Of a stretch of DNA of 38,764 nt, positions 1 through 38,764 are shown in pieces (within the stretch, counting starts at the first letter, position 1; every line of letters begins with the position of its first letter). The notes beneath the pieces were generated by a model. The model searched no databases. It was given only the letters and a program-made list of their open reading frames with translations, and was not told the DNA's origin. The position numbers and the translations under genes were made by a program. The DNA comes from Octopus bimaculoides (lineage: Eukaryota): positions 28,830,079-28,868,842 of the forward strand of contig NC_068987.1 of NCBI RefSeq assembly GCF_001194135.2. Reading direction: 5' to 3'.

Positions 1-426
1 GTTTATAAATATTCCCCCATCATGACTTAAATTTGCCCATAGCCTACCTCTTTTTATCGACAGTTACTTATATCCAACTGGCTACTCCTGATGTCTTATT
101 TCCTCCTTCAGGAAAGGGAATACATGTGATAATATTTGTGACCATACCTACCCATGAGCTGTCAACTCGCTCTTTTCCTTTGTTCAAAATAGACAGTCTT
201 CTAGTCATACATTTAGTAGCCGATAAAGAAATAAATGAATTAGAAATAAATTACAACCCTTACAACACTATGACTCCACTATGTTCCGTGCGGTTCTTAG
301 AAGTTGTAGTCTAATATTTGCTACAATAGCGACAACACGAATTTTTCCCATCTTCTTGCTCTGTTAAAATATTCAAGGAGAATTATCTTAATGTGTCCAA
401 CTTGCTAAAACTCCATTTATTTATTC

Positions 427-514
427 GTGCAGCTGAGGATGGAACTGCATTTAAATTGATGTAATGATTGCATTGTTCAATTAAATGGAGCCCCTTGAAA
501 CGGTCGTACTGCAT
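427..514 (+). ncRNA. Type I hammerhead ribozyme (copy 1), long stem II, near-palindromic stem III
   Basis: Stem I GTGCAG (427-432) pairs with CTGCAT (509-514). Core CTGAGGA at 433-439. Long hairpin stem II at 440-496. GAAA at 497-500. Stem III ACGGTCGT at 500-507. Cleavage triplet GTA at 506-508. A homologous copy lies at 38410-38499 (-). Confidence 0.8.
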
Positions 515-560
515 TACTACTTGATATCCTGTTGCTTATTTTAATTATATATATATATAT
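427..560 (+). mobile_element. Hammerhead-bearing dispersed repeat (Penelope-like terminal repeat or retrozyme-like), ending in (AT)n
   Basis: About 75-80% identity by hand alignment to 38376-38499 (-). The shared region includes the tail GATATCC(T)TGTTGCTTATTTTRATT followed by (AT)n. The family assignment is inference. Confidence 0.55.
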
Positions 561-727
561 ACATAGTAAATTTCTATTAATTGACAACTTATAAGTGGAT
601 GTTTCGCATTGCATTTTTTACAGATGAAGCATTGACTCTGTCTGAGACCTTCTGACATATTCTTGCTTGTGAAAAGTTTGGTGGTAACGGTCTAATACTT
701 AGGGGATACATAAAAAGTGATGTTTCA

Positions 728-1297
728 NNNNNNNNNNNNNNNNNNNNNNNNNNNNNNNNNNNNNNNNNNNNNNNNNNNNNNNNNNNNNNNNNNNNNNNNN
801 NNNNNNNNNNNNNNNNNNNNNNNNNNNNNNNNNNNNNNNNNNNNNNNNNNNNNNNNNNNNNNNNNNNNNNNNNNNNNNNNNNNNNNNNNNNNNNNNNNNN
901 NNNNNNNNNNNNNNNNNNNNNNNNNNNNNNNNNNNNNNNNNNNNNNNNNNNNNNNNNNNNNNNNNNNNNNNNNNNNNNNNNNNNNNNNNNNNNNNNNNNN
1001 NNNNNNNNNNNNNNNNNNNNNNNNNNNNNNNNNNNNNNNNNNNNNNNNNNNNNNNNNNNNNNNNNNNNNNNNNNNNNNNNNNNNNNNNNNNNNNNNNNNN
1101 NNNNNNNNNNNNNNNNNNNNNNNNNNNNNNNNNNNNNNNNNNNNNNNNNNNNNNNNNNNNNNNNNNNNNNNNNNNNNNNNNNNNNNNNNNNNNNNNNNNN
1201 NNNNNNNNNNNNNNNNNNNNNNNNNNNNNNNNNNNNNNNNNNNNNNNNNNNNNNNNNNNNNNNNNNNNNNNNNNNNNNNNNNNNNNNNNNNNNNNNN
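728..1297. other. Assembly gap (N run)
   Basis: Run of N with (AT)n on its right side. Confidence 1.
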
Positions 1298-5901: not shown

Positions 5902-6113
5902 TAATTTCAAATTTAAGCACAATGCCAGTAATTCTGGGGCGAGGTTAAGTCGATTATATAGACACCAGTACTCAAATAGTACTTATTTCATCGAACCCGA
6001 TAGGATGAAAGGCGAAGTTGACCTCGGCAGAATTTGAACTCAGAACATAAAAACGTATGAAAAACTGATAAGCATCTCGCCTGGCGTGCTAACGATTCTT
6101 CTAGCTCACTGCC
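5902..6113 (-). mobile_element. tRNA-derived SINE, group A (octopus OK/OR-like)
   Basis: Reverse complement reads GGCAGTGAGCTAG-AAGAATCGTTAGCACGCCAGG...TTCTGAGTTCAAATTCTGCCGAGGTCAAC with a B-box-like GTTCAAAT. Homologous copies at 13976, 14262, 22057, 22262, 24665 and 30795. Confidence 0.85.
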
Positions 6114-6114
6114 T

Positions 6115-6609
<495 letters not shown>

Positions 6610-6675: not shown

Positions 6676-8645
6676 TTCAGCGAAAGTGGAATGGCAGGAT
6701 ATTGCATTGCAGGAACTTACCGTAGCTCTAACGAAAGCTCATAAGTCGAAGTCTCCTGGATATGAAAAACCCACACAAAGTTCTGATTTTATGGCCTCTC
6801 ATCGTTACATTGCCAGTTAAATGGATGTTTCTCTGATATCATCAGAAACCCCGAGAATATTCCATACTGGCTCTTATTATGGATGACATACCTACACCCT
6901 AAAATGAGCGAAACAAAGAACCAAAAAACTATAGGCTGATCACTTGTAGGATAGCTATGTATAAAATACTTATATCTATTTTCGCCGAAAGGATATACCA
7001 TTTCTCGATCAAAACTATACCCTTCCTCTTAAATAAAATGGGTGCAAAAAAACTCATACTGATGCAAAGAGCAGCTATTAACAAATCGTGTGATAGTCGA
7101 AATTTACCCATCAAAAATCAATATCTTAGTAGAGCATGTATTGACTCTCGTAACGCGTTGAACAGAGATCGGCATACTTGGATATTCAAAGGTACTAAAT
7201 ATATACAAGATCTTTCCTTTCATAAAAGTCTTTCGTCCACTTAGTATGGGACTTGGAACACGCAGCTGTTTCTCAAACTTATGAAAGGCTTGGATGTATC
7301 TCAATTCATGAAAATAGATCGCGAAGTATTCCAAGGTGGTTCACTCTCCCCTAAATTTTCTTCTGTTTTTTCGTTAGTCCCTTGTCCCACAAGTCAAACA
7401 GAACAAATTACTGATACGAACGGATTGAGAAGATTACCTCTCAGTTGTTCCACAAGGATGATATGAAACTATAATCAAAAGACCAAAGTTACTTGAAAGG
7501 GTTAATAATAGCTATGAAAAAAATCTGTGATGACATCAATATGGAATTTGGCCCTAGTTAGGCGTGCAAAAGTTACATTCAAATGCTGTAAACTACAGCT
7601 CAAAGGGAAGGGATTCAACATGTGTGAATGAAAGAAAAGACCAAGAGAGAATATTATTGACGCATCAGAATGGCCCTGAATAATGAGCTGAACTCCAATA
7701 ATAGACTTCAAGCTATAAACTCCTTGGTGGCACCAGTTGTCCAGTATAGCCTTAATGTCATAATTGGGATATGAGTGAATACCAACGTATGGGCATAAAG
7801 ACCAGGAAACTGCTGACATTAAACAGGATGTCAAGAATTCCCATAGCATGACATGAGTAATGCCTCGAATGAGTTCAGGAAACTGATGAGGATATGAAAA
7901 GAATTCATCAGACGCTGAAGAGCACTGTTTTGAAAGGCAAAACATAAAAACATTATTTTAGCGGCACAAGATAAGAGTCTCTTCATTCGGAGCTGTCAAG
8001 CTAGTGTCTTGCACAAAGAGGCAAACATAAAATCTACACTTCACGATGACAAACGTGGGAGAATCGACCCCATTGCTGCCGGTTGCATATATAATATAAA
8101 GCCAGGCATGATCAAGTTGGCCACAACTTGCCCTGGAGCAAATGCCATCACTATGACAATCCGCACACGAAGAACCGCTACGAATACTACCCAAAGCCAG
8201 TCACTGAGGAAGAGAATATTACCATCCTATAGGATTATAGGATACATGCAGACAGTCAAAATATGCTAACAGGCTAAACATTATCATCAAAGATCTAAGA
8301 CAAAACAAAACGCACCTGTTAATTGATATGACGGTATATGATGGTAGAAACATCTTAGTAAAAGAATTTGAAAACCTATCCAAATACAAGGACCTTGAGT
8401 TTGAGATACCTAAGGTGTGGCAATTAAAACCCATAGCTTTTTCCTTTTTTACAGTTGCTCTGAAAATGGTCAAGAAGGATAAAAACAAATGTTTTAACCA
8501 GCTTCCATGGAAACCAACAACCTACAAGGTTCGAATATTTCTGCTGACATCAACTGCTCACCTTCTCATGAGGTATCTCTATCTGATCTATATTTGCTTA
8601 GGCATCTGGTTGAAAACCAGCCGAAGATGAAATAAAATAAATCAA
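6676..8645 (+). mobile_element. Degenerate R4/Dong-like retrotransposon (RT, CCHC region, RLE), many frameshifts and stops
   Basis: Ordered motifs: ALTKAHKSKSPG (~6725), NYRLITC..MYKILISI (~6930-6980), FQGGSLSP (~7330), DDMKL (~7460), DDINMEFG (~7530), KTRKLLTLN (~7800), IAAGC (~8075), LLIDMTV...LSKYKDLEFEIPKVWQLKP (8320-8430), LLTSTAHLLMRYL (~8545). Confidence 0.85.
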
Positions 8646-8920: not shown

Positions 8921-9172
8921 NNNNNNNNNNNNNNNNNNNNNNNNNNNNNNNNNNNNNNNNNNNNNNNNNNNNNNNNNNNNNNNNNNNNNNNNNNNNNNNN
9001 NNNNNNNNNNNNNNNNNNNNNNNNNNNNNNNNNNNNNNNNNNNNNNNNNNNNNNNNNNNNNNNNNNNNNNNNNNNNNNNNNNNNNNNNNNNNNNNNNNNN
9101 NNNNNNNNNNNNNNNNNNNNNNNNNNNNNNNNNNNNNNNNNNNNNNNNNNNNNNNNNNNNNNNNNNNNNNNN
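8921..9172. other. Assembly gap (N run)
   Basis: Run of N flanked by (AT)n. Confidence 1.
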
Positions 9173-11949: not shown

Positions 11950-13420
11950 GAATCTCAATGGTCAGCAGACAGCTATGTTTAAATACCATTTCCACGCTGC
12001 GCAAACCCCAACATCAATGACAACCTCCACCTATGCGATACATCATTGAGGGGCTGGGACTCAAGCTGGCTTCGGTGGGGCATTGATCAATTTTGATCCA
12101 TCAAAAGCATTCGATCGGGTCAACCACCGTTACCTGGAAGCCCTGCTAAAGTGGTTGATTTTGTACACGTTGTCAAAGGCTGGATCACTGCAATGCACAG
12201 CTACACGTGCTCGGTGGTCACACTAAATGGTGATCTATCGGAACTGTCTAGCATCACACTGTCGGTACGTCAGGCTTCCCACTGTCACCCCTACTGTACC
12301 TGCAGGCTCCGGAGCCACTGCTGCGAAAGTTGGAACAATTGAGAGGCATCCCTTTCAAACTAAGACTCGGAAGAGCAGTATCTGCCACTGGGCACCTGGA
12401 CGGTGAGAGCGGTGCTGTCTGATGGTGTCGTCGAACGCTGGACCGACGGACCAGTTGAACTACTCGGGGTCTGGTTTGGTCCTGACCTCTAGGTGGATAA
12501 GAACTGGTACGAGGGGACGAACAGGGTGACCAGTCTTACCCAGAAACGTGCTAAGAGGAAGCTGCATTTGAAAGGTCGCGTAAAAGTAGTGAAGGCCTAC
12601 ATCACCTCCGTTATCATTTATCGTCTGACCGTCGTGCCTTACCCCAGTTATTGCCTGATCAAGCTGGAACGTCTCTTGTTCATGTTTTTGTGGAAGAGAA
12701 GCGTTCCAATGGTCAGACGGTGAATCTGCTGTCGGTCCTTCTGCGTGGCGGATTAGTCATACCGTGGCTTTTGATGCGCAGACATGTGCTCAGGTTGCGC
12801 CTCCTGCAGCGATTTCTAGATGATGAATGTGTGTGGGCTCCGTTTTTCAGGTACATATTTCCACAACTCGTGTCTTTCACGGAGCAGCAGTCTTGGGTTA
12901 AACATAGACCAAGACTGGGCGCCTGGCCCTAAAAATATCGTGAGGCGTTCACTGTCCTCTACCATTCGCGCAATAGGATCGTCTGTCGTCCGAGTCTGTA
13001 GTGATTATTGCACATACGCCCGCCTTTCTTCAATCGGGTGGGCAAAGCAGTTTTACTTTGCCTGGTTGATATGGCGAAAGAGGTTGTCTGGTGGACGAGG
13101 CTGAAAGGAATCAGGAAAGGGACATTCCTTTTTGGTAAAACCCTCATTGACTTTTCAAGTTTGACTTGAAAAGGAAATTGAGGGTGGAGAGGGATGTGCT
13201 GTTCTCGAGTGAATTTCTGAAAGAGCGGGTGAAATTTGCAAAAATGGCTAGAGTGGATGGTACCACTCTGACTGTAGACCTGTGATTCGGAGAAAAGGAG
13301 TTGAAAAAGGTACTAATTTGTGGTTTTCAGGGTGGTGTTGTATGATTGCTCCTTGATTATCCCTAGTGCTGCTCCTGTAAGTGGAGCACCACCCATAATA
13401 GTATTTTCCCTTATTGTACT
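11950..13420 (+). mobile_element. Degenerate, internally deleted Tx1-clade (L1 group) LINE: RT to 3' end
   Basis: NINDNLHL..IIEG..GALINFDPSKAFDRVNHRYLEALLK (~12010-12150), GWITAMHS..VTLNGDLS..SVRQ (12178-12275), VELLGVWFGPDL, RKLHLKGRVKVVKAYITSVIIYRLTVVP..LERLLFMFLWK, GGLVIPWLLMRRHVLRLRLLQRFL. No YADD segment was found between these blocks, suggesting an internal deletion. Confidence 0.85.
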
Positions 13421-15699: not shown

Positions 15700-16987
15700 T
15701 CTCAACCAATAAGGGAAGGCTTCAACCCGATGACTGAAAATTATTTTCTGTGATGCAGGTTCAAATTCGTTCAGACTAAAAGCATAAAACAGAGCTGGAT
15801 GCACTACAAGCAGTGTGTGGAGCTGTTGTGAACAAGAAATGAAACACATTGTATCAGACGGATCACTATTATCAGAGAAAGAATAAATTTTAAACCTTGA
15901 CTACCCTAGGTTTGCGCTCATACTGGGAAAGAATTCCAGAGCCCCACCATTCAGTAAAGGAAGGAATGGACATAGTGACAATTCCTCTGCTTCAGTATCA
16001 GAGTTAACATTTTAATGTTTTCTGGAGAAGAAATATAGCATGAATTCGTAAAATTTACAATCGCTATCCTAATACTTGTGTGTCATTATTATATAGAGCT
16101 TATTCGCCCATGCCCAACAACTGACTAAATACTGAACTAGAGAGAAATGGCATATTACCATAGTAACAGAAACAGGGCGCGGAATAGTTGCATGACTATA
16201 AACCATCAGTATCACCATAAGGCAAATAAAATTTAATGAAAACTAAAACTACAATCATTAAAAAAATTCAGCGAAATCCGGTTTTATTTGACAATCATTG
16301 CTTCCATTAACACATTTATTGAATGAAACCCCCTACAGCTATAGATGTTATGGACATACTATAAATTATTTTTCGTACATAAATGAATTAAAAATATTTA
16401 CAACTGACAATGCTGAGCTGGGAAACCTACTTGAAGTTCTTTTTTGTAATTCAGTCAACACATAAAATTCAGTTTGGGATTAGACAAATGCGCCAAACCT
16501 ACAACAAATGAGGCAAATTAACTAAAACTGAGAATATCATAATGGGTAAATGTAAGAAAATTAAAGCTTACATCAGCATCACATATACAAGTATTTAAGA
16601 GTTGAGGGCGTAGATACGGCCCAGAGCATAAATGTGAAAGAACAGAATATTAGGAATTAAAAGGAAAACATAAATATACTAGCCATGATACCATTTACTA
16701 CATCAGCACAATAAAATCAATTTTATGTCAATAGGATAGCTTTCAAAGAGAAAAAAACTTCTCAGGAAAATACGAGAGCATTTGGAATTCATCAATACAA
16801 ATCCCAAATATATTTGTATGAGAGTGGGTATACATGAATGTATGTATGTATGTACGTATGCATGTATGTATGTATGTATGTATGTATGTATGTACGTACG
16901 TATTTATGTATGTATATATGTTTGCATGTATGTATGCGTGTATGTATGTATGTATGTAGGTAGGTAGGTAGGTAGGTAAGTAGGTAG

Positions 16988-17062
<75 letters not shown>

Positions 17063-17200
17063 TATAGATAGATAGATAGATAGATTTGTAGAGTAATATA
17101 TAGATTCATTGAATTGTTTAGTTATCACAATATCTCCTCTAGGAGACTGGAGACTCACACAGCAGTATGACGCAGCGGAAATCCAAGGAATCACATCCAA
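15700..17200 (+). mobile_element. Very old R4/Dong-like RT remnant interrupted by a tetranucleotide microsatellite
   Basis: HLLNETPYSY (~16315), ELKIFTTDNAELGNLLEV (~16385-16440), GLDKCAK (~16476-16497) and YKYL (~16585) occur in R4/Dong RT order. The 5' boundary is uncertain. Confidence 0.55.
16835..17085. repeat. (TATG)n-(TAGG)n-(TAGA)n compound microsatellite
   Basis: Directly visible. Confidence 0.97.
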
Positions 17201-20087: not shown

Positions 20088-20487
20088 ACTCTCTTACTCT
20101 TTTACTCTTTTACCTGTTTCAGTCATTTAACTGTGGCCATGCTGTGGCACCTCCATTAGTCGAGCAAATCGACCCCAAGACTTATTCTTTGTAAGCCTAG
20201 TACTTATTCTATCGGTCTCTCTTGCCGAACCGCTAGTTTACGGGAACCTAAACATGCCAGCACCTATTGCCAGGCGATGTTGGGGTGACAAACACAGATA
20301 CACAACTTATACACGCATATACATATATATATATATATACATATATACGACGGGCTTCTTTCAGTTTCCGTCTACCAAATCTACTCACAAGGCTTTGGTC
20401 GGCCCGAGGCTATAGGAGAAGACACTTGCCCAAGGTGCCATGTGGTAGGTAAACAAGCTACTTACCACACAGCCACTCCTACGCCTC
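20088..20487 (-). mobile_element. Composite SINE: tRNA/CORE-like head (group D, 20487-20348), internal (AT)/(GT) microsatellite, group C tail with (GAGTAAAA)n end
   Basis: Minus strand: GGCGTAGGAGTGGCTGTGTGGTAAGTAGCTTG...GGCACCTTGGGCAAGTGTCTTCT (MIR-core-like), then a microsatellite, then ...CGGTTCGGCAAGAGAGACCGATAGAATAAGTACTAGGCTTACAAAGAATAAGTC...GAGTAAAAGAGTAAAAGAG. The same architecture occurs at 26070-26320. Confidence 0.82.
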
Positions 20488-24664: not shown

Positions 24665-24815
24665 TTCTTTATTGCCCACCAGGAGCTAAACATAGAGGGG
24701 ACAAACTAGGATAGACACAGGGATTAAGTCGATTAGATCAACACCAGTGCGTAAGTAGAAGTTAATTTATCGACCCCGAAGGGATGAAAGGCAAAGTCGA
24801 CCTCGGCGGAATTTT
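24665..24815 (-). mobile_element. 5'-truncated group A SINE (alternative-tail subfamily)
   Basis: TCGACCCCGAAGGGATGAAAGGCAAAGTCGACCTCGGCGGAATTT plus a tail matching 14400-14478. Confidence 0.85.
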
Positions 24816-24899
24816 CACCAGTAATTCTAACTGATGTGATTCTTTCTGATTCAGCTATAGTTGTGACTTTTAAAATTATTGTGGTGCAACATACATTGA

Positions 24900-24924
24900 T
24901 AGATAGAGAGTCAAACAGACAGAC

Positions 24925-25014
<90 letters not shown>

Positions 25015-25024
25015 GTAGATAGAT

Positions 25025-25066
<42 letters not shown>

Positions 25067-25072
25067 GGATAC

Positions 25073-25139
<67 letters not shown>

Positions 25140-25235
25140 CGCAGACTGACAGATAGACAAACAGAGAGACAGACAGACAGACACATAGACACACAGACTG
25201 AGGAACACACAAACAGACAGAGACATATAGATATA
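24900..25235. repeat. (GATA)n/(GACA)n compound microsatellite
   Basis: Directly visible. Confidence 0.97.
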
Positions 25236-26069
25236 TCCTCGGTAGTTTTTTAAATCTCTGCTGGTGTGGGCTTGCATGAGCCATTAACATTGATGGCGTT
25301 ACTTTCGGCAATCTAATACTCTTATGAGAACCACACATAGCATCAACATCGGAGAAGGAAAACAAGGCGCAACCAACCACACTTTAAGCGCCACCAAGCC
25401 ACCATGTGGGAGCGATCGGATGGAGTCCACAACAGCAATATCTCGTAATAACATTTGACATTGTAGGTGGACAACATTAGCCTCAGAAGCCAAGAATGCG
25501 CCTGTCGACATTACAGCCTAGTTGGCAACAGTTCGATGCAGTTTCATCATCCGCTACGCTTTTCCGCATAAGCGGCAGCGAATGATCCAGAAATCAAAAT
25601 GTGAGCGTCAATTACTGACACGTTCAGAAGCAGCCTAAACAGAATGACGCCATTGAAACTTCTTCTTTCTGATATTTCCTTCAACAAAGTGACACTGAAA
25701 TTCTCGAACACGAGAAGCAGCCATAACCGACGACAATATGTATACCCGTGTTGGGATTTAATTTTCGAGTTTCTTACTCAGTAAGAAAACCGCGGTTTTT
25801 AAACGGGAAACAAGACCGTTTGATAGGCTTTTAGACATATATTTATATTGTATGAACACAAGTAAACATGTACATACATATTTATATACATATTTACATG
25901 GATATGAGATCAGACATGAATAACAGTGCATGAAAGTTTTCTATAATTTAACATTAAATTTATAGTCCGAATGGAGTAACTGCAGATTTTCTCACCATTT
26001 CAGTGTAAATGTTTTCTATTCTACTAAATGTAGCCGTGATTTTGTACTATAAAGCTTGATTCCGAACAT

Positions 26070-35159: not shown

Positions 35160-35361
35160 GCGTGTATGAGTATGTGTGCGTGTATACATATATATATTAT
35201 ATATATGTATATTATATGTTTATATATATATATAAATATTATATATGTATATTGTATATATGTATATTATACATACATATATATNNNNNNNNNNNNNNNN
35301 NNNNNNNNNNNNNNNNNNNNNNNNNNNNNNNNNNNNNNNNNNNNNNNNNNNNNNNNNNNNN

Positions 35362-35406: not shown

Positions 35407-36619
35407 ATTACTACACTTGATAATCGTATTCTTTACTTCTTCGTGATCAACATTGCAGCTGATATCATCGTTATCATCCTGAGCTACACGACCATCTCTG
35501 TTCGAATTATTATTATCATATTTTAAAAAGTTGCAAATGAGTTTTTACTGCATCAGCAGGTGCACCTCCGTATACCGAGGTGTGGACAGCATTGTCTTGG
35601 GAGAGTACAATTATATTTACATAGTACATCTGTTTACTTGGTTATGGTGGCTTGTTTTTATATTTCTGATGTAGCATTGATGTTTCGTCTCAGAGTTTGC
35701 TAATTGGTTGATGCTATAAAACGTTGCATTATTTCATAGAATAAATCTGTTTAGTATACGTTCTGTTTTGTAATTTAACGCCGAGTACAGAATGCGTTCA
35801 TTATATTATATTAAGGTTCTCTATTTCTAGTCGCGTAACGAGTGTGTAGATTACGCGCAGAAAATTTATGTGTGTCGTGTTATGGAATTAAACGTTTCTT
35901 CAGTAACATGAGGAACAAGCTTACTAAGTTGTTAAGTGTGACTGTCTTTAGAGATGTAAGTCTTAATGCGTGTTTTCAAGTTTGCATTTCTTTTGTTTGT
36001 GCCCCAGTCATTACTCATAGCAATCGATATATGTATACACCGAACCTACATCTGTAAAATTTATGGTTATTGTAACCTATTCTACCAAGAAGTATAGCTT
36101 GCCATGCTTTATGTAGAGTTACAGTCACAGTAAAAAAGTAAAACAATAAAAATTTTAGTCAGCAACAAAATATAACCCTTACCCATATACATAAAAAAAA
36201 CATCTTCGATGTCATCTCCTATAGTAATAACTAGCACAACTAGATGCACTGCGGTTGTTTCGAATAGTGAAACTTAATTTCAATAACTTGAACCAGCTTT
36301 TTTTCTTTTTCAGCTTTAGAAGATATTTTATAATTTAGTATAAAACTTGATTCAAGCCACAACAGAACACAACTGCCGTATCTGAAAGAGTGATTCTAAC
36401 ACAGACATCCTCGTTTGCAACCCCATAATGTCCCTCCTCTAACTGATAGGAATTTACTAGCAAACACACTCGTACTTCTAATAGACACACATACTTTCTC
36501 CCCCACCTTGCTCTCTCTCTCTCTCTCTCTCTCTATTTATCTGTATGTATTTATCTATCAATCTTTTGGCTTCTATACACTCTTTGTCGTAGTCTGGAAT
36601 TGTCAGGGCGCCAATGAGT

Positions 36620-36790: not shown

Positions 36791-38346
36791 AACAGCAATA
36801 ATCCAAACAATCTCGGAGAGGAACGAAAGAAATACTGTCACCAGATCAAACTAGGAAAATAATAGCAAAGGACTAAAGAAATCAAGACACAGAAAGAGCT
36901 TTGAGAGGAAAATGTTAAAATCAAAACCTCATGTAGGAAATTAAAATAGAATAATTAATAAAAGAAAGTTTGCATAATGGAAATAGAAATAAGCAATGCG
37001 AATTAAAACATTCAGAAATTTAGACATGGTGGTAGAACTAACACATGCAAAACAAATACATTACATGTAAGACATAACAGAATTTAACCTTAGGTTATCT
37101 ACATAATAGCGAGCAACTTAAAAGAGATACGCATAATGGGAAGTATGAGAAATAGAAAAATGGAAGTGATGAATATAAAAACATGAATAAATAACCTAAA
37201 AAAACAAGTAGAAAAAAATATAATAAATAAGTATATATTACTTGGTCCTTAACAGTATCAGTAGGATTAAACATATCTGAGAAAAGAAAGAAATTTGAGA
37301 AAGAAAAAAAAAAACTAACGCGGAAAAAATATTCCAAATTTTTGAATATAGAAAACAACAATTATGCTAAAAGAAAAGAATGGCAAAGTCTTCCATTTCA
37401 GCTACGAGAGACTGTATCAAGAACTAAGTACAAAAAAATATATATTTAAGACACTATCAACTTCAATATGAATAGGGGGATTTTGAGTTGGTGTAGGAAT
37501 TGCAAATAGAGTGTTACGGGCAACAAGCGTAGCAACTGATTAAATGCTGCAAAAATAATAACAAAAGAAAACACCTGAAAGTTTCCAACAAATTATAAAC
37601 TCCTATCTACTTCTTATTGTAATATACAATTGTATCACATATTCCTGGCCCAAAAACTTTATGACCTCTTAAAAATGTCTTAAGCAACGGTTGAATGGGT
37701 CACCGGGGTGAACTGCATCTTGAACACTAAAGCTAAAAAAAAAGTAGAATTAAAAGAGAAAAACAATTTATTTTTTATAGATTCCGTAATGCAGTATAAC
37801 ATAACATATATATAACTACCTGGCAAAGAAAAAAGTCCTACATTAGTGAAAGGGTGCTGAAAATATATGTTGTTTCATATGATTCAAAAAGCGATAATGG
37901 AAGGTGAGTTACAGCGGGGCAAAAATTGAGCGTCGGGGAAATTTTGAGAATACTTCCAACACTATGAGCCCAACGAACAATATGATGACTACATCAAATA
38001 TGACATATATAATGGGCAAAATAATTAGCGGATGCATAAAAGATTTTTTTAAATCAGATCTCATTTCTGTTACAACAGAAATATTTTAATGTATGTTCTT
38101 AAAACTCATTTTTATGCCTAGCTTAAACATATTTAATCACTCTGCTGATGATTGTCGAACATGTTGACCAAGTTACATTTATGGTGTCATGAGCTTGACA
38201 TTGATTTAGCAAAACTAGACTGAAACCGAAGGGAAAATGTCTACTCTATTTACATAAAACAAAGATTTAGCAGGTTGCGCGGGCGCAGTGGTTTGTGGTT
38301 CATTGGTTCTTCCATACCCTCTTTCTCTGTTTTTCAGTCTTTCTCC

Positions 38347-38350
<4 letters not shown>

Positions 38351-38377
<27 letters not shown>

Positions 38378-38499
38378 ATCAAAATAAGCAACAAGGATAT
38401 CCAACGTTAATGCAGTACGATGGTTTCATGCGACTCCATTTATTTAAGCAATGTGGACATTACATCAAATGTAGAATGCAGGGCAATCCTCAGCTGCAC
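38351..38499 (-). mobile_element. Hammerhead-bearing dispersed repeat, second copy, ending in (AT)n
   Basis: Reverse-complement homolog of 427-560 with the same 3' tail and (AT)n terminus. Confidence 0.55.
38410..38499 (-). ncRNA. Type I hammerhead ribozyme (copy 2)
   Basis: Minus strand reads GTGCAG-CTGAGGA-[stem II]-GAAA-C-CATC-GTA-CTGCAT. Core is at 38487-38493, GAAA at 38424-38427 and GTA at 38416-38418. Catalytic residues and stem I are identical to copy 1. Confidence 0.78.
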
Positions 38500-38764
38500 A
38501 AAGATATAGAAATTTACTGAAATTACATTTCAACAGAAGGGCATATTTTTAAAACTACATTTAAACTCTCCAAGTAGAAAGGAAGAATACAAAAAAAAAA
38601 CATTTTGACTTAGCCAGACCATACAGACTAGCGAATAATTCTAAGCAGACTTTTAACTGTCACTGATTTTATTTCTTTTTTTTTTTTGTTTGTTTGTTTC
38701 TGATTTATGGATCATCTTATCAGACTTAGTAATTCGAAGCTTAAGAGGGCCCTAGCATTCTAAG

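What the first reader, a model, noticed from the sequence alone, without database searches (positions are those of the whole stretch)
427..514. Intact type I hammerhead ribozyme with an unusually long stem II
Seen: all hammerhead elements are present in type I order. Stem I is GTGCAG/CTGCAT (6 bp), the core is C3-U4-G5-A6-G7-G8-A9 (433-439) with G12-A13-A14-A15.1 (497-500), the A15.1-U16.1 and C15.2-G16.2 pairs can form, and the NUH triplet GUA predicts cleavage after 508. Stem II is a ~57-nt hairpin (CATTTAA-TTGA-GTAATG / CATTGT-TCAA-TTAAATG) rather than a short one. Known: type I hammerheads occur in Penelope-like elements and in metazoan non-LTR retrozymes, usually with short stems. Inference: this may be an unannotated long-stem-II hammerhead family of an octopus-like genome. 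One deviation is that the 10.1-11.1 pair is U-U rather than the canonical G-C.
Basis: partly seen in the sequence, partly recalled or inferred. Interest (0 to 1): 0.9.

Follow-up and report, generated by a model that had tools for sequence, protein, structure and literature searches.

The report
Hammerhead-like ribozyme in octopus retroelement
A complete hammerhead self-cleaving RNA motif with an unusually long middle stem sits near the 3' end of a repeated, non-coding mobile element of an octopus genome; it is probably one more transposon-borne hammerhead, and whether it cleaves is untested.

Summary
At 427-514 (+) every hammerhead (HHR) core base, a 6-bp helix I, a 57-nt hairpin as helix II, a 2-bp helix III and a GUA cleavage triplet lie in type I order.

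It is not an isolated match. It lies about 37 nt from the 3' end of a dispersed, non-coding element of at least 530 bp that abuts (TA)n. A second copy with an intact motif is at 38534-38383 (-). Two more copies came from Logan octopus-like contigs; one has G5 mutated and one has G12 mutated.

The majority consensus of the four copies keeps the full motif. HHR-defining positions changed less than the rest (5/81 against 40/225, p=0.007). Two helix II pairs show changes on both sides. The U10.1-U11.1 mismatch is in all four copies and is a published, active natural variant.

Against it:
- Rfam gives no hammerhead hit.
- The lowest-energy fold is not the HHR fold.
- The base of helix II is weak.
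- Only four copies could be retrieved.
- No cleavage data exist.

Best reading (about 0.6): a real type I HHR of a non-autonomous retroelement resembling Penelope-like elements, probably slow as a monomer. It is a long-helix-II variant of a known kind. Interest is moderate, not 0.9.

The parts
18..545 (+). Copy A of a dispersed non-coding retroelement. It is at least 530 bp and its 5' end may lie beyond the window start.
   Evidence: Homologous to L010 rc 1230-1731 (67% over 526 columns) and to L009 rc 492-903 (73%). nhmmer places it at 18-540. No Pfam domain in its only ORF.
427..432 (+). Helix I, 5' strand (GUGCAG; positions 2.6-2.1)
   Evidence: Pairs with 509-514. 4 of 6 pairs are invariant in 4 copies; the two outer pairs are broken in copy C.
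433..439 (+). Core box C3 U4 G5 A6 G7 G8 A9 (CUGAGGA)
   Evidence: Identical in copies A, B and D; CUAAAGA in copy C.
440..496 (+). Helix II: a 57-nt imperfect hairpin closed by U440.U496 (10.1/11.1), with apical loop AUUG at 467-470
   Evidence: Predicted by the single-sequence fold and independently by RNAalifold on 4 copies. 88% of cells are paired. Pair 441-495 is G.U / U-A / A-U / A-U, and pair 448-487 is C-G changed to U-A in copy D.
497..499 (+). Core box G12 A13 A14
   Evidence: GAA in copies A, B and C; AAA (G12 to A) in copy D.
500..507 (+). Helix III: A15.1-U16.1 and C15.2-G16.2 around loop GGUC. The octamer ACGGUCGU is self-complementary if G.U pairs are allowed.
   Evidence: Both pairs are invariant in 4 copies while the loop varies (GGUC, CAUC, UGUC). 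The self-duplex scores -5.8 kcal/mol for copies A and D and 0 for B and C.
508..509 (+). Predicted cleavage site GUA|C (A17 | C1.1)
   Evidence: Follows from hammerhead numbering applied to the sequence. No cleavage data exist.
509..514 (+). Helix I, 3' strand (CUGCAU)
   Evidence: Invariant in all 4 copies.
515..545 (+). 3' tail of the element between the hammerhead and the microsatellite
   Evidence: Shared with copy B. The stretch from cut site to repeat is 37 nt in A and 38 in B. It is shorter in C (26 nt to the (TA)n) and in D (17 nt to a (GT)n run).
546..561 (+). (TA)8 microsatellite abutting the 3' end of copy A
   Evidence: (TA)n also follows copies B and C.
38383..38534 (-). Copy B of the element: 5'-truncated and the most divergent copy, with an intact hammerhead motif at 38499-38410. 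Core box 38493-38487, GAA 38427-38425, predicted cut 38416|38415.
   Evidence: blastn gives 81% over 151 nt; alignment; nhmmer; descriptor hit. There are 0 of 27 changes at hammerhead-defining positions against 21 of 75 elsewhere.
38350..38378 (-). (TA)n microsatellite abutting the 3' end of copy B

Best explanation
The motif is a genuine type I hammerhead ribozyme. It is carried on the sense strand, about 37 nt from the 3' end, of a non-coding and therefore non-autonomous retroelement of an octopus genome. Its copies are 5'-truncated to different extents and end at (TA)n. That layout resembles Penelope-like elements and the retrozyme-like elements derived from them.

Shown here:
- All core bases and three helices are present in type I order.
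- The motif is the family consensus and is intact in two divergent copies.
- The long helix II and the U10.1.U11.1 mismatch are family features.

Inferred:
- In the element's transcript, helix I (6 bp), the long helix II and a short helix III assemble the core.
- The 2'-OH of A508 then attacks its 3' phosphate. This would leave a 2',3'-cyclic phosphate on A508 and a 5'-OH on C509.
- Helix III has only 2 bp and its octamer ACGGUCGU is nearly palindromic, and a rod-like alternative fold is more stable. Cleavage is therefore probably slow in a monomer and favoured when two copies pair through helix III, as in newt, axolotl and Penelope-like-element hammerheads.
- The likely role is processing of element or read-through transcripts.

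Dispersed copies then decay neutrally: copy C lost G5 and copy D lost G12.
For: - The sequence features are all present.
- A second intact copy lies in the window. Two further copies are in Logan contigs. The majority consensus of the four keeps the whole motif.
- In copies B, C and D, hammerhead-defining positions differ from the consensus at 5/81 sites against 40/225 elsewhere (Fisher p=0.0066). Copy B alone shows 0/27 against 21/75.
- 89.7% of cells pair in the named structure, against 45% or less when partners are slid. Two helix II pairs change on both sides.
- RNAalifold independently recovers helices I and II.
- Chance expectation is 0.005-0.035 per window.
- The motif is on the strand expected to be the element's RNA, judged from the 3' (TA)n and the variable 5' truncation.
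- From the literature: U10.1-U11.1 is the best-tolerated mismatch and occurs in natural hammerheads (PMC3088659). Axolotl HHR_Amex2 has it and cleaves (PMC7229834).
- Metazoan type I hammerheads have 6-bp helix I and 1-2-bp helix III with a palindromic loop, and act as dimers. Hammerheads of Penelope-like elements have an enlarged helix II (PMC4209133).
- Several clades of Penelope-like elements insert at (TA)n. Some Naiad 3' UTRs carry core halves 35-50 nt apart (PMC8557442).
Against: - There is no Rfam hammerhead hit even at E<=10 on short stretches. The 57-nt helix II may explain this, but that was not tested.
- The fold energy is not unusual (z=-1.4).
- The best hammerhead-compatible fold of copy A is 4 kcal/mol above the lowest-energy fold, which pairs C3-G5 with helix III bases. 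RNAalifold also pairs the two core strands with each other.
- The base of helix II is weak in copy A (U.U, G.U, G-C, then an internal loop).
- The canonical G10.1-C11.1 pair is absent.
- Position 7 is G, which to my recollection is the least common base there.
- Helix III is palindromic only in copies A and D.
- Only four copies were available, so the covariation does not beat the shuffles (147/500).
- No RT or endonuclease ORF, no pseudo-LTR and no tandem partner was seen.
- The tail downstream of the cut site is retained in genomic copies, so the RNAs that were copied back into DNA were not cut there.
Confidence: 0.6

Rival explanations
1. The resemblance is chance inside a structured 3' end. 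On this reading 427-514 is just a long imperfect hairpin near the 3' end of a retroelement, for example a stem-loop recognised by the reverse transcriptase of its autonomous partner. It happens to carry CUGAGGA and GAAA on opposite arms. The bases are conserved for hairpin or protein recognition, not for catalysis, and the RNA does not self-cleave.
For: - RNAalifold and the single-sequence fold prefer a rod in which the two core strands pair: U434-A508, G435.U507, G438-C505, A439-U504, U440.G503.
- Two one-sided changes keep those rod pairs: G5 to A in copy C and G503 to A in copy B.
- Rfam is silent.
- The whole 3' module, not only the core, is better conserved than the body of the element.
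- With a loose descriptor a large genome, or its repeat library, should hold a few chance matches. This is an extrapolation.
- A third descriptor hit in this window (35803-35909, minus strand) is plainly chance.
Against: - The match covers all 11 core bases plus A15.1-U16.1, C15.2-G16.2 and H17 in exact register.
- It also shows features the descriptor did not ask for: helix II closes one position from the core in all copies, the mismatch is U.U (the best tolerated), helix I has 6 bp, the helix III octamer is near-palindromic, and the motif is on the sense strand.
- Copy B, at 28% from the consensus elsewhere, has 0/27 changes at hammerhead positions.
- Rod-like alternative folds are normal for hammerhead-bearing RNAs.
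Confidence: 0.3
2. It is a relic. The family descends from a hammerhead-bearing element, but the ribozyme was already disabled in the family's founder by the long insertion in helix II and the loss of G10.1-C11.1. The motif survives only by descent.
For: - Two of four copies have lethal core changes.
- The base of helix II is weak and the lowest-energy fold is not the hammerhead fold.
- Cephalopod Naiad elements are described as long inactivated (PMC8557442).
- Copies differ from one another by 20-33%, so the family is old.
Against: - The deficit of changes at hammerhead positions (p=0.0066) and the fully intact motif in the most divergent copy point to selection in the master lineages after the long helix II arose. 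All four copies share that long helix.
- Changes on both sides at the base of helix II keep pairing.
Confidence: 0.1

Closest known systems
Type I hammerheads of Penelope-like elements ('min-HHRs' and variants; Cervera & de la Pena 2014, PMC4209133)
   Same: Type I topology on a retroelement's sense strand, an enlarged helix II, a very short helix III with a near-palindromic sequence implying dimer action, and expected low monomer activity. Members of this element class prefer (TA)n (PMC8557442) and often carry a short 3' 'tail' (PMC11167929).
   Different: Helix II here is about 22 pairs with bulges (57 nt), against 6-8 bp. The 10.1/11.1 position is U.U instead of the highly conserved G-C. 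No extra unpaired base follows A9 if U440 is read as 10.1. No pseudo-LTR, RT or GIY-YIG ORF is visible.
Naiad 3'-UTR 'HHR_half_core' cases (Craig et al. 2021, PMC8557442)
   Same: The CUGANGA and GAAA boxes lie far apart in the 3' end of an element that targets (TA)n (35-50 nt there, 57 nt here). Naiad remnants are reported in Octopus species.
   Different: Those cases were not accepted as hammerheads and no helices were described. I could not obtain their sequences (no supplement is held), so homology is untested. No Naiad coding sequence is seen next to any copy.
Metazoan non-LTR retrozymes (Cervera & de la Pena 2020, PMC7229834), in particular axolotl HHR_Amex2
   Same: Type I hammerhead with 6-bp helix I, 2-bp helix III plus a tetraloop, and a U.U mismatch at the base of helix II. 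The host element is non-coding, AT-rich and a few hundred bp long. HHR_Amex2 cleaves weakly as a monomer (22% in 1 h) and well as a dimer.
   Different: Retrozymes are tandem repeats of about 170-400 bp whose paired hammerheads release circular RNAs. The copies here are dispersed and single, with one hammerhead each and no tandem partner in the readable sequence. The helix II there is short.
Rfam Hammerhead_1 (RF00163)
   Same: Same core consensus and same order of helices.
   Different: Neither window copy nor the Logan copies reach even E<=10.

Membership tests
Hammerhead ribozyme, type I | Conserved core C3 U4 G5 A6 N7 G8 A9 ... G12 A13 A14, the A15.1-U16.1 pair, and H17 (not G) | tested here: met
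   All present at 433-439, 497-500, 507 and 508. They are also present in copy B and in the 4-copy consensus.
Hammerhead ribozyme, type I | Three helices around the core, with helix I open-ended | tested here: met
   Helix I has 6 bp. Helix II is a long hairpin. Helix III has 2 bp plus a 4-nt loop. 89.7% of cells pair across 4 copies, against 45% or less when partners are slid. Helix III is marginal.
Hammerhead ribozyme, type I | G10.1-C11.1 closing pair of helix II | tested here: not met
   U.U in all four copies. This is a known tolerated natural variant (PMC3088659, PMC7229834), so it weakens the case but does not exclude membership.
Hammerhead ribozyme, type I | Match to the curated covariance model (Rfam RF00163 or other hammerhead families) | tested here: not met
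   No hit at the gathering score or at E<=10 or E<=5 on short stretches, nor at E<=1 in L009 and L010. The long helix II is the probable cause. This could not be tested because a trimmed sequence cannot be submitted.
Hammerhead ribozyme, type I | Covariation supporting the helices | tested here: inconclusive
   Two pairs change on both sides (441-495, 448-487), but with 4 sequences 147 of 500 shuffles do as well.
Hammerhead ribozyme, type I | Core conserved above background among relatives | tested here: met
   5/81 against 40/225 changes from the consensus in copies B, C and D, p=0.0066. The sample is small, and copy A, on which the motif was found, contributes to the consensus.
Hammerhead ribozyme, type I | Loop-loop tertiary contact between helices I and II | not testable with these tools
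   The apical loop of helix II is too far from the core. An internal loop 3 bp above the core could stand in for it, but that is speculation.
Hammerhead ribozyme, type I | Site-specific self-cleavage giving 2',3'-cyclic phosphate and 5'-OH ends | not testable with these tools
   Needs in vitro transcription or end-specific RNA sequencing.
Penelope-like element or its non-autonomous derivative | RT plus GIY-YIG ORF, or sequence shared with such an element | tested here: not met
   No ORF or Pfam domain in copy A, in L009 or in 1.2 kb upstream in L010. An autonomous partner could not be searched for in an octopus genome.
Penelope-like element or its non-autonomous derivative | Pseudo-LTR or partial tandem structure | tested here: not met
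   No internal direct repeat in L010. The window holds only two far-apart inverted copies. A 570-nt assembly gap starts 166 nt after copy A's (TA) run.
Penelope-like element or its non-autonomous derivative | Insertion at (TA)n, and a 5'-truncated copy population | tested here: met
   (TA)n abuts the 3' end in 3 of 4 copies. L010 also has (TA)10 1.2 kb upstream. The 5' ends fall at about window-equivalent 18 or less, 100-145 and 390.
Metazoan non-LTR retrozyme | Tandem repeats of 170-400 bp, each with a type I hammerhead, giving circular RNAs | tested here: not met
   Copies are single and dispersed with no tandem array. Circular RNA is not testable here.

The most novel reading that the evidence does not exclude
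Hammerheads with a very long helix II and a U10.1.U11.1 closing mismatch may be functional ribozymes of (TA)n-targeting Penelope-like lineages. These would include the Naiad-type elements now described as lacking hammerheads, whose 'half-core' 3' UTRs would then be real ribozymes missed by every current descriptor and by Rfam. The octopus family would be the first worked example. An internal loop of helix II would replace loop 2 in the tertiary contact.
Probability: 0.15. Interest if true: 0.65.

Novelty: new variant of a known kind. Interest (0 to 1): 0.45.

Why it matters
If the motif cleaves, it extends the accepted architecture of natural type I hammerheads in two ways. Helix II would be several times longer than descriptors allow, and the closing U.U mismatch would be fixed in a family.

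It would also add cephalopods to the animals with transposon-borne hammerheads. Current searches (Rfam, RNAmotif descriptors with short helix II) would then be under-counting ribozymes in retroelements of the Penelope-like class that target (TA)n.

If it does not cleave, it is a useful caution. Loose hammerhead descriptors find complete cores inside ordinary transposon hairpins.

Either way the biology is an increment on a well-known theme, not a new kind of system.

Tried and rejected
- **Rfam at gathering and at lenient E-values** on both window copies and on the Logan copies: no hammerhead.
- **tRNA scan** for a SINE head: none found.
- **JGI metagenome scan** with an unbiased 20-base pattern from the 3' tail: 8 loci, all chance 20-mers with no flanking homology.
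- **GTDB genome and IMG/VR scans** with a 26-base family pattern: nothing.
- **Word-indexed protein search** with antisense translations of the element, and then with a 1485-aa chimera of all frames of four copies: nothing.
- **Exhaustive profile search:** this was the only route to new copies, giving P0121 and P0122. Its top hit P0120 is an unrelated 61-bp minisatellite, and P0123 is a repetitive protein I did not follow.
- **O. bimaculoides protein P0001:** not on record for contig retrieval.
- **A TARA scaffold carrying an octopus-like LINE ORF (L014):** holds no copy.
- **Exact look-ups of 12 window ORFs:** none is in the collection.
- **Pfam on 10 window ORFs:** no domains.
- **Supplement of the Naiad paper:** not held.
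- **Nested-model energy of a double hammerhead:** not computable, because the structure is crossing.
- **miRNA-like hairpin:** rejected because the fold z-score is only -1.4 and no Rfam miRNA matches.
- **'U440 is the extra unpaired base after A9' (the register of Penelope-like-element hammerheads):** rejected because it pairs worse in copies A, B and D.

Full report
**What is in the sequence**

The window is eukaryotic draft sequence: 35% G+C, seven N gaps and many (TA)n runs. The best protein match of a LINE-like ORF remnant at 6240-6506 is an Octopus bimaculoides protein at 85% identity. An octopus origin is therefore likely.

At 427-514 on the + strand the sequence reads GUGCAG-CUGAGGA-(57 nt)-GAA-ACGGUCGU-A|CUGCAU.
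- helix I is 427-432 with 509-514, 6 bp with one G.U;
- C3-A9 is 433-439;
- G12-A14 is 497-499;
- A15.1-U16.1 is 500-507 and C15.2-G16.2 is 501-506;
- A17 is 508;
- the 10.1/11.1 position is U440.U496.

**Is it more than chance?**

I wrote a relaxed type I descriptor: CUGANGA, 6-80 nt, GAAA, a helix III hairpin of 7-24 nt with at least 2 bp, H17, and a contiguous helix I. I ran it on 1000 dinucleotide shuffles of the window.
- With helix I of at least 6 bp it gives 0.035 loci per window.
- When the helix III hairpin is at most 10 nt it gives 0.005.
- It finds nothing in the reversed window or in about 60 kb of unrelated loci.

In the real window it finds three places: the finding, a second site at 38499-38410 (-), and a site at 35909-35803 (-). 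The last has no helix II and no similarity to the others, so I take it as chance.

A single hit would not be convincing in a genome of this size. The argument rests on the relatives.

**Relatives**

blastn of 1-727 against the window finds a second copy, B, on the minus strand at 38508-38358, 81% identical over 151 nt and ending in (TA)n.

No octopus genome is in the DNA collections. I therefore translated the antisense frame, which happens to be open across the motif, and ran the exhaustive profile search. It returned two spurious ORFs, P0121 and P0122, that are translations of further copies. Their Logan contigs gave:
- copy C (L009, SRR11869385);
- copy D (L010, L011 and L012, the same locus in three runs).

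Copy C aligns to window 145-560 (73%). Copy D aligns to window 18-525 (67% with lenient scoring).

The motif is therefore the 3' module of an element of at least 530 bp.
- It has no ORF of note and no Pfam domain.
- No tRNA or Rfam match is present.
- The 5' ends differ between copies: about 18 or less, 100-145, and 390 in window-equivalent positions.
- (TA)n abuts the 3' end in A, B and C.
- Copy D's 3' end is replaced by (GT)n plus another SINE-like insertion also seen at window 20438-20486.

This is the signature of a non-autonomous retroelement copied from its 3' end. The hammerhead lies on the strand that would be the element's RNA.

**What the four copies say**

Copies A and B have the complete motif. 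Copy C has CUAAAGA (G5 and G7 changed) and two broken outer pairs of helix I. Copy D has G12 changed to A. The majority consensus is the full motif, so it was a property of the family's ancestor and not an accident of copy A.

I left copy A out, because the motif was discovered on it, and counted differences from the consensus in B, C and D. The 27 hammerhead-defining positions changed at 5 of 81 sites, against 40 of 225 elsewhere in 420-525 (Fisher one-sided p=0.0066).

Copy B is the most divergent copy (21/75 elsewhere) yet shows 0/27 at those positions. A direct A-B comparison gives 0/27 against 24/97 (p=0.0013), but that number is inflated by ascertainment on copy A.

The differences fall where a hammerhead tolerates them:
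- the apical loop of helix II (AUUG to UCCA);
- loop 3 (GGUC, CAUC, UGUC);
- the base of helix II, where pair 10.2-11.2 is G.U, U-A, A-U and A-U;
- pair 448-487, which is C-G changed to U-A in copy D.

For the named structure 89.7% of cells pair, against 45% or less when partners are slid. With four sequences the covariation measures do not exceed the shuffles (147/500). RNAalifold, run blind, recovers helix I and the long helix II.

**Weak points**

- Rfam reports no hammerhead for any copy, even at E<=10 on a 351-nt stretch. A 57-nt helix II would be heavily penalised by RF00163, but I could not test a trimmed sequence.
- The fold energy of 420-520 is ordinary (z=-1.4).
- The lowest-energy fold of copy A (-22.6 kcal/mol) pairs GCUG 432-435 with CGGU 501-504. 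The best hammerhead-compatible fold is -18.5.
- RNAalifold likewise pairs the two core strands with each other. One-sided changes in copies B and C keep two of those rod pairs.
- Helix II of copy A starts U.U, G.U, G-C and then opens into an internal loop. Copy B's base is better (U.U, U-A, G-C, C-G).
- Helix III has 2 bp.
- The octamer ACGGUCGU can form an 8-bp intermolecular helix with two G.U pairs in copies A and D (-5.8 kcal/mol), but not in B or C. A palindromic ancestor ACGAUCGU would be one step from both A and B. That is conjecture.

**Comparison with what is known**

- Perreault et al. found natural hammerheads whose helix II starts with U10.1-U11.1. They note it is the best-tolerated mismatch (PMC3088659).
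- Axolotl HHR_Amex2 (about 60,000 copies) has a U.U at the base of helix II and a 2-bp helix III with a tetraloop. It cleaves 22% in an hour as a monomer and efficiently as a dimer (PMC7229834).
- Canonical metazoan type I hammerheads have a 6-bp helix I and a 1-2-bp helix III with a small palindromic loop.
- Hammerheads of Penelope-like elements have an enlarged helix II (6-8 bp), act as dimers and cleave poorly in vitro (PMC4209133).
- Neptune, Naiad and Hydra elements insert at (TA)n. Naiad remnants occur in Octopus species. Eight Naiad families have the two core halves 35-50 nt apart in or near the 3' UTR, recorded as 'HHR_half_core' and not accepted as hammerheads (PMC8557442).
- Penelope-like elements often carry an optional 30-40-bp 3' tail (PMC11167929).
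- No paper in the library describes hammerheads in cephalopods.

**Verdict**

- The most likely reading (about 0.6) is a genuine type I hammerhead of a non-autonomous retroelement resembling Penelope-like elements. The long helix II and the U.U closing mismatch are fixed family features. It is probably a slow, dimer-favoured cleaver, and individual copies are decaying.
- The main rival (about 0.3) is a retroelement 3' hairpin that carries the boxes by chance and is conserved for another reason.
- A smaller share (about 0.1) goes to a relic that was already dead in the family's founder.
- Membership is incomplete. The core and helices are met. G10.1-C11.1 and the Rfam model are not met. Catalysis is untestable here.
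- It is not a retrozyme in the published sense, because there are no tandem units. It cannot be called a Penelope-like element, because no coding part or pseudo-LTR was seen. It works like their hammerheads would.
- It is a new variant of a known kind, of moderate interest.

Noticed in passing
window 6038-6506 (+) and 8241-8627 (+): Remnants of a LINE-like ORF. The best hit is an uncharacterised Octopus bimaculoides protein (85%), with many hits in other invertebrates. No Pfam domain.
   Followed up: partly
window 12000-13400: A GC-rich island (51% against 35% overall) with overlapping ORFs of 90-125 aa on both strands. No Pfam hit; nature unknown.
   Followed up: partly
window 20438-20486; L010 16-64: A 49-nt piece, 84% identical between the window and the DNA that interrupts the 3' end of copy D. 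It is probably another abundant octopus SINE.
   Followed up: no
window 35803-35909 (-): A third match to the relaxed hammerhead descriptor (CUGAAGA ... GAAA). It has no helix II pairing and no similarity to the family, so I judge it a chance hit. It shows how loose the descriptor is.
   Followed up: yes
window 728-1297, 2235-2692, 8921-9172, 35285-35361 and other N runs: Several assembly gaps are flanked by (TA)n or related microsatellites. The gaps probably hide long simple repeats. One gap starts 166 nt after copy A's (TA) run, so a nearby second copy cannot be excluded.
   Followed up: no
L010 reverse strand 1-20 and 1230-1731: Copy D's contig begins with (TA)10, 1.2 kb upstream of the part homologous to window 18-525. 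If that is the 5' junction, the full element is about 1.75 kb and lies inside a (TA)n microsatellite.
   Followed up: no
window 383-514 (-) and 38275-38520 (+): The strand opposite the hammerhead is open for 43 and 81 codons, starting at an ATG made by helix I (CTGCAT). Gene callers have turned such copies into 'proteins' (P0121, P0122). These are spurious ORFs, but they proved useful as handles for finding copies.
   Followed up: yes
L013 733-3600: A 61-bp minisatellite with 47 copies, read as a 1035-aa ORF in an ENA contig. It was a false positive of the profile search and is unrelated to the element.
   Followed up: yes
window 16792-17200 and 24733-25380: Long runs that translate as repeated YLSI (a 12-nt repeat unit) create long spurious ORFs on the minus strand.
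   Followed up: no
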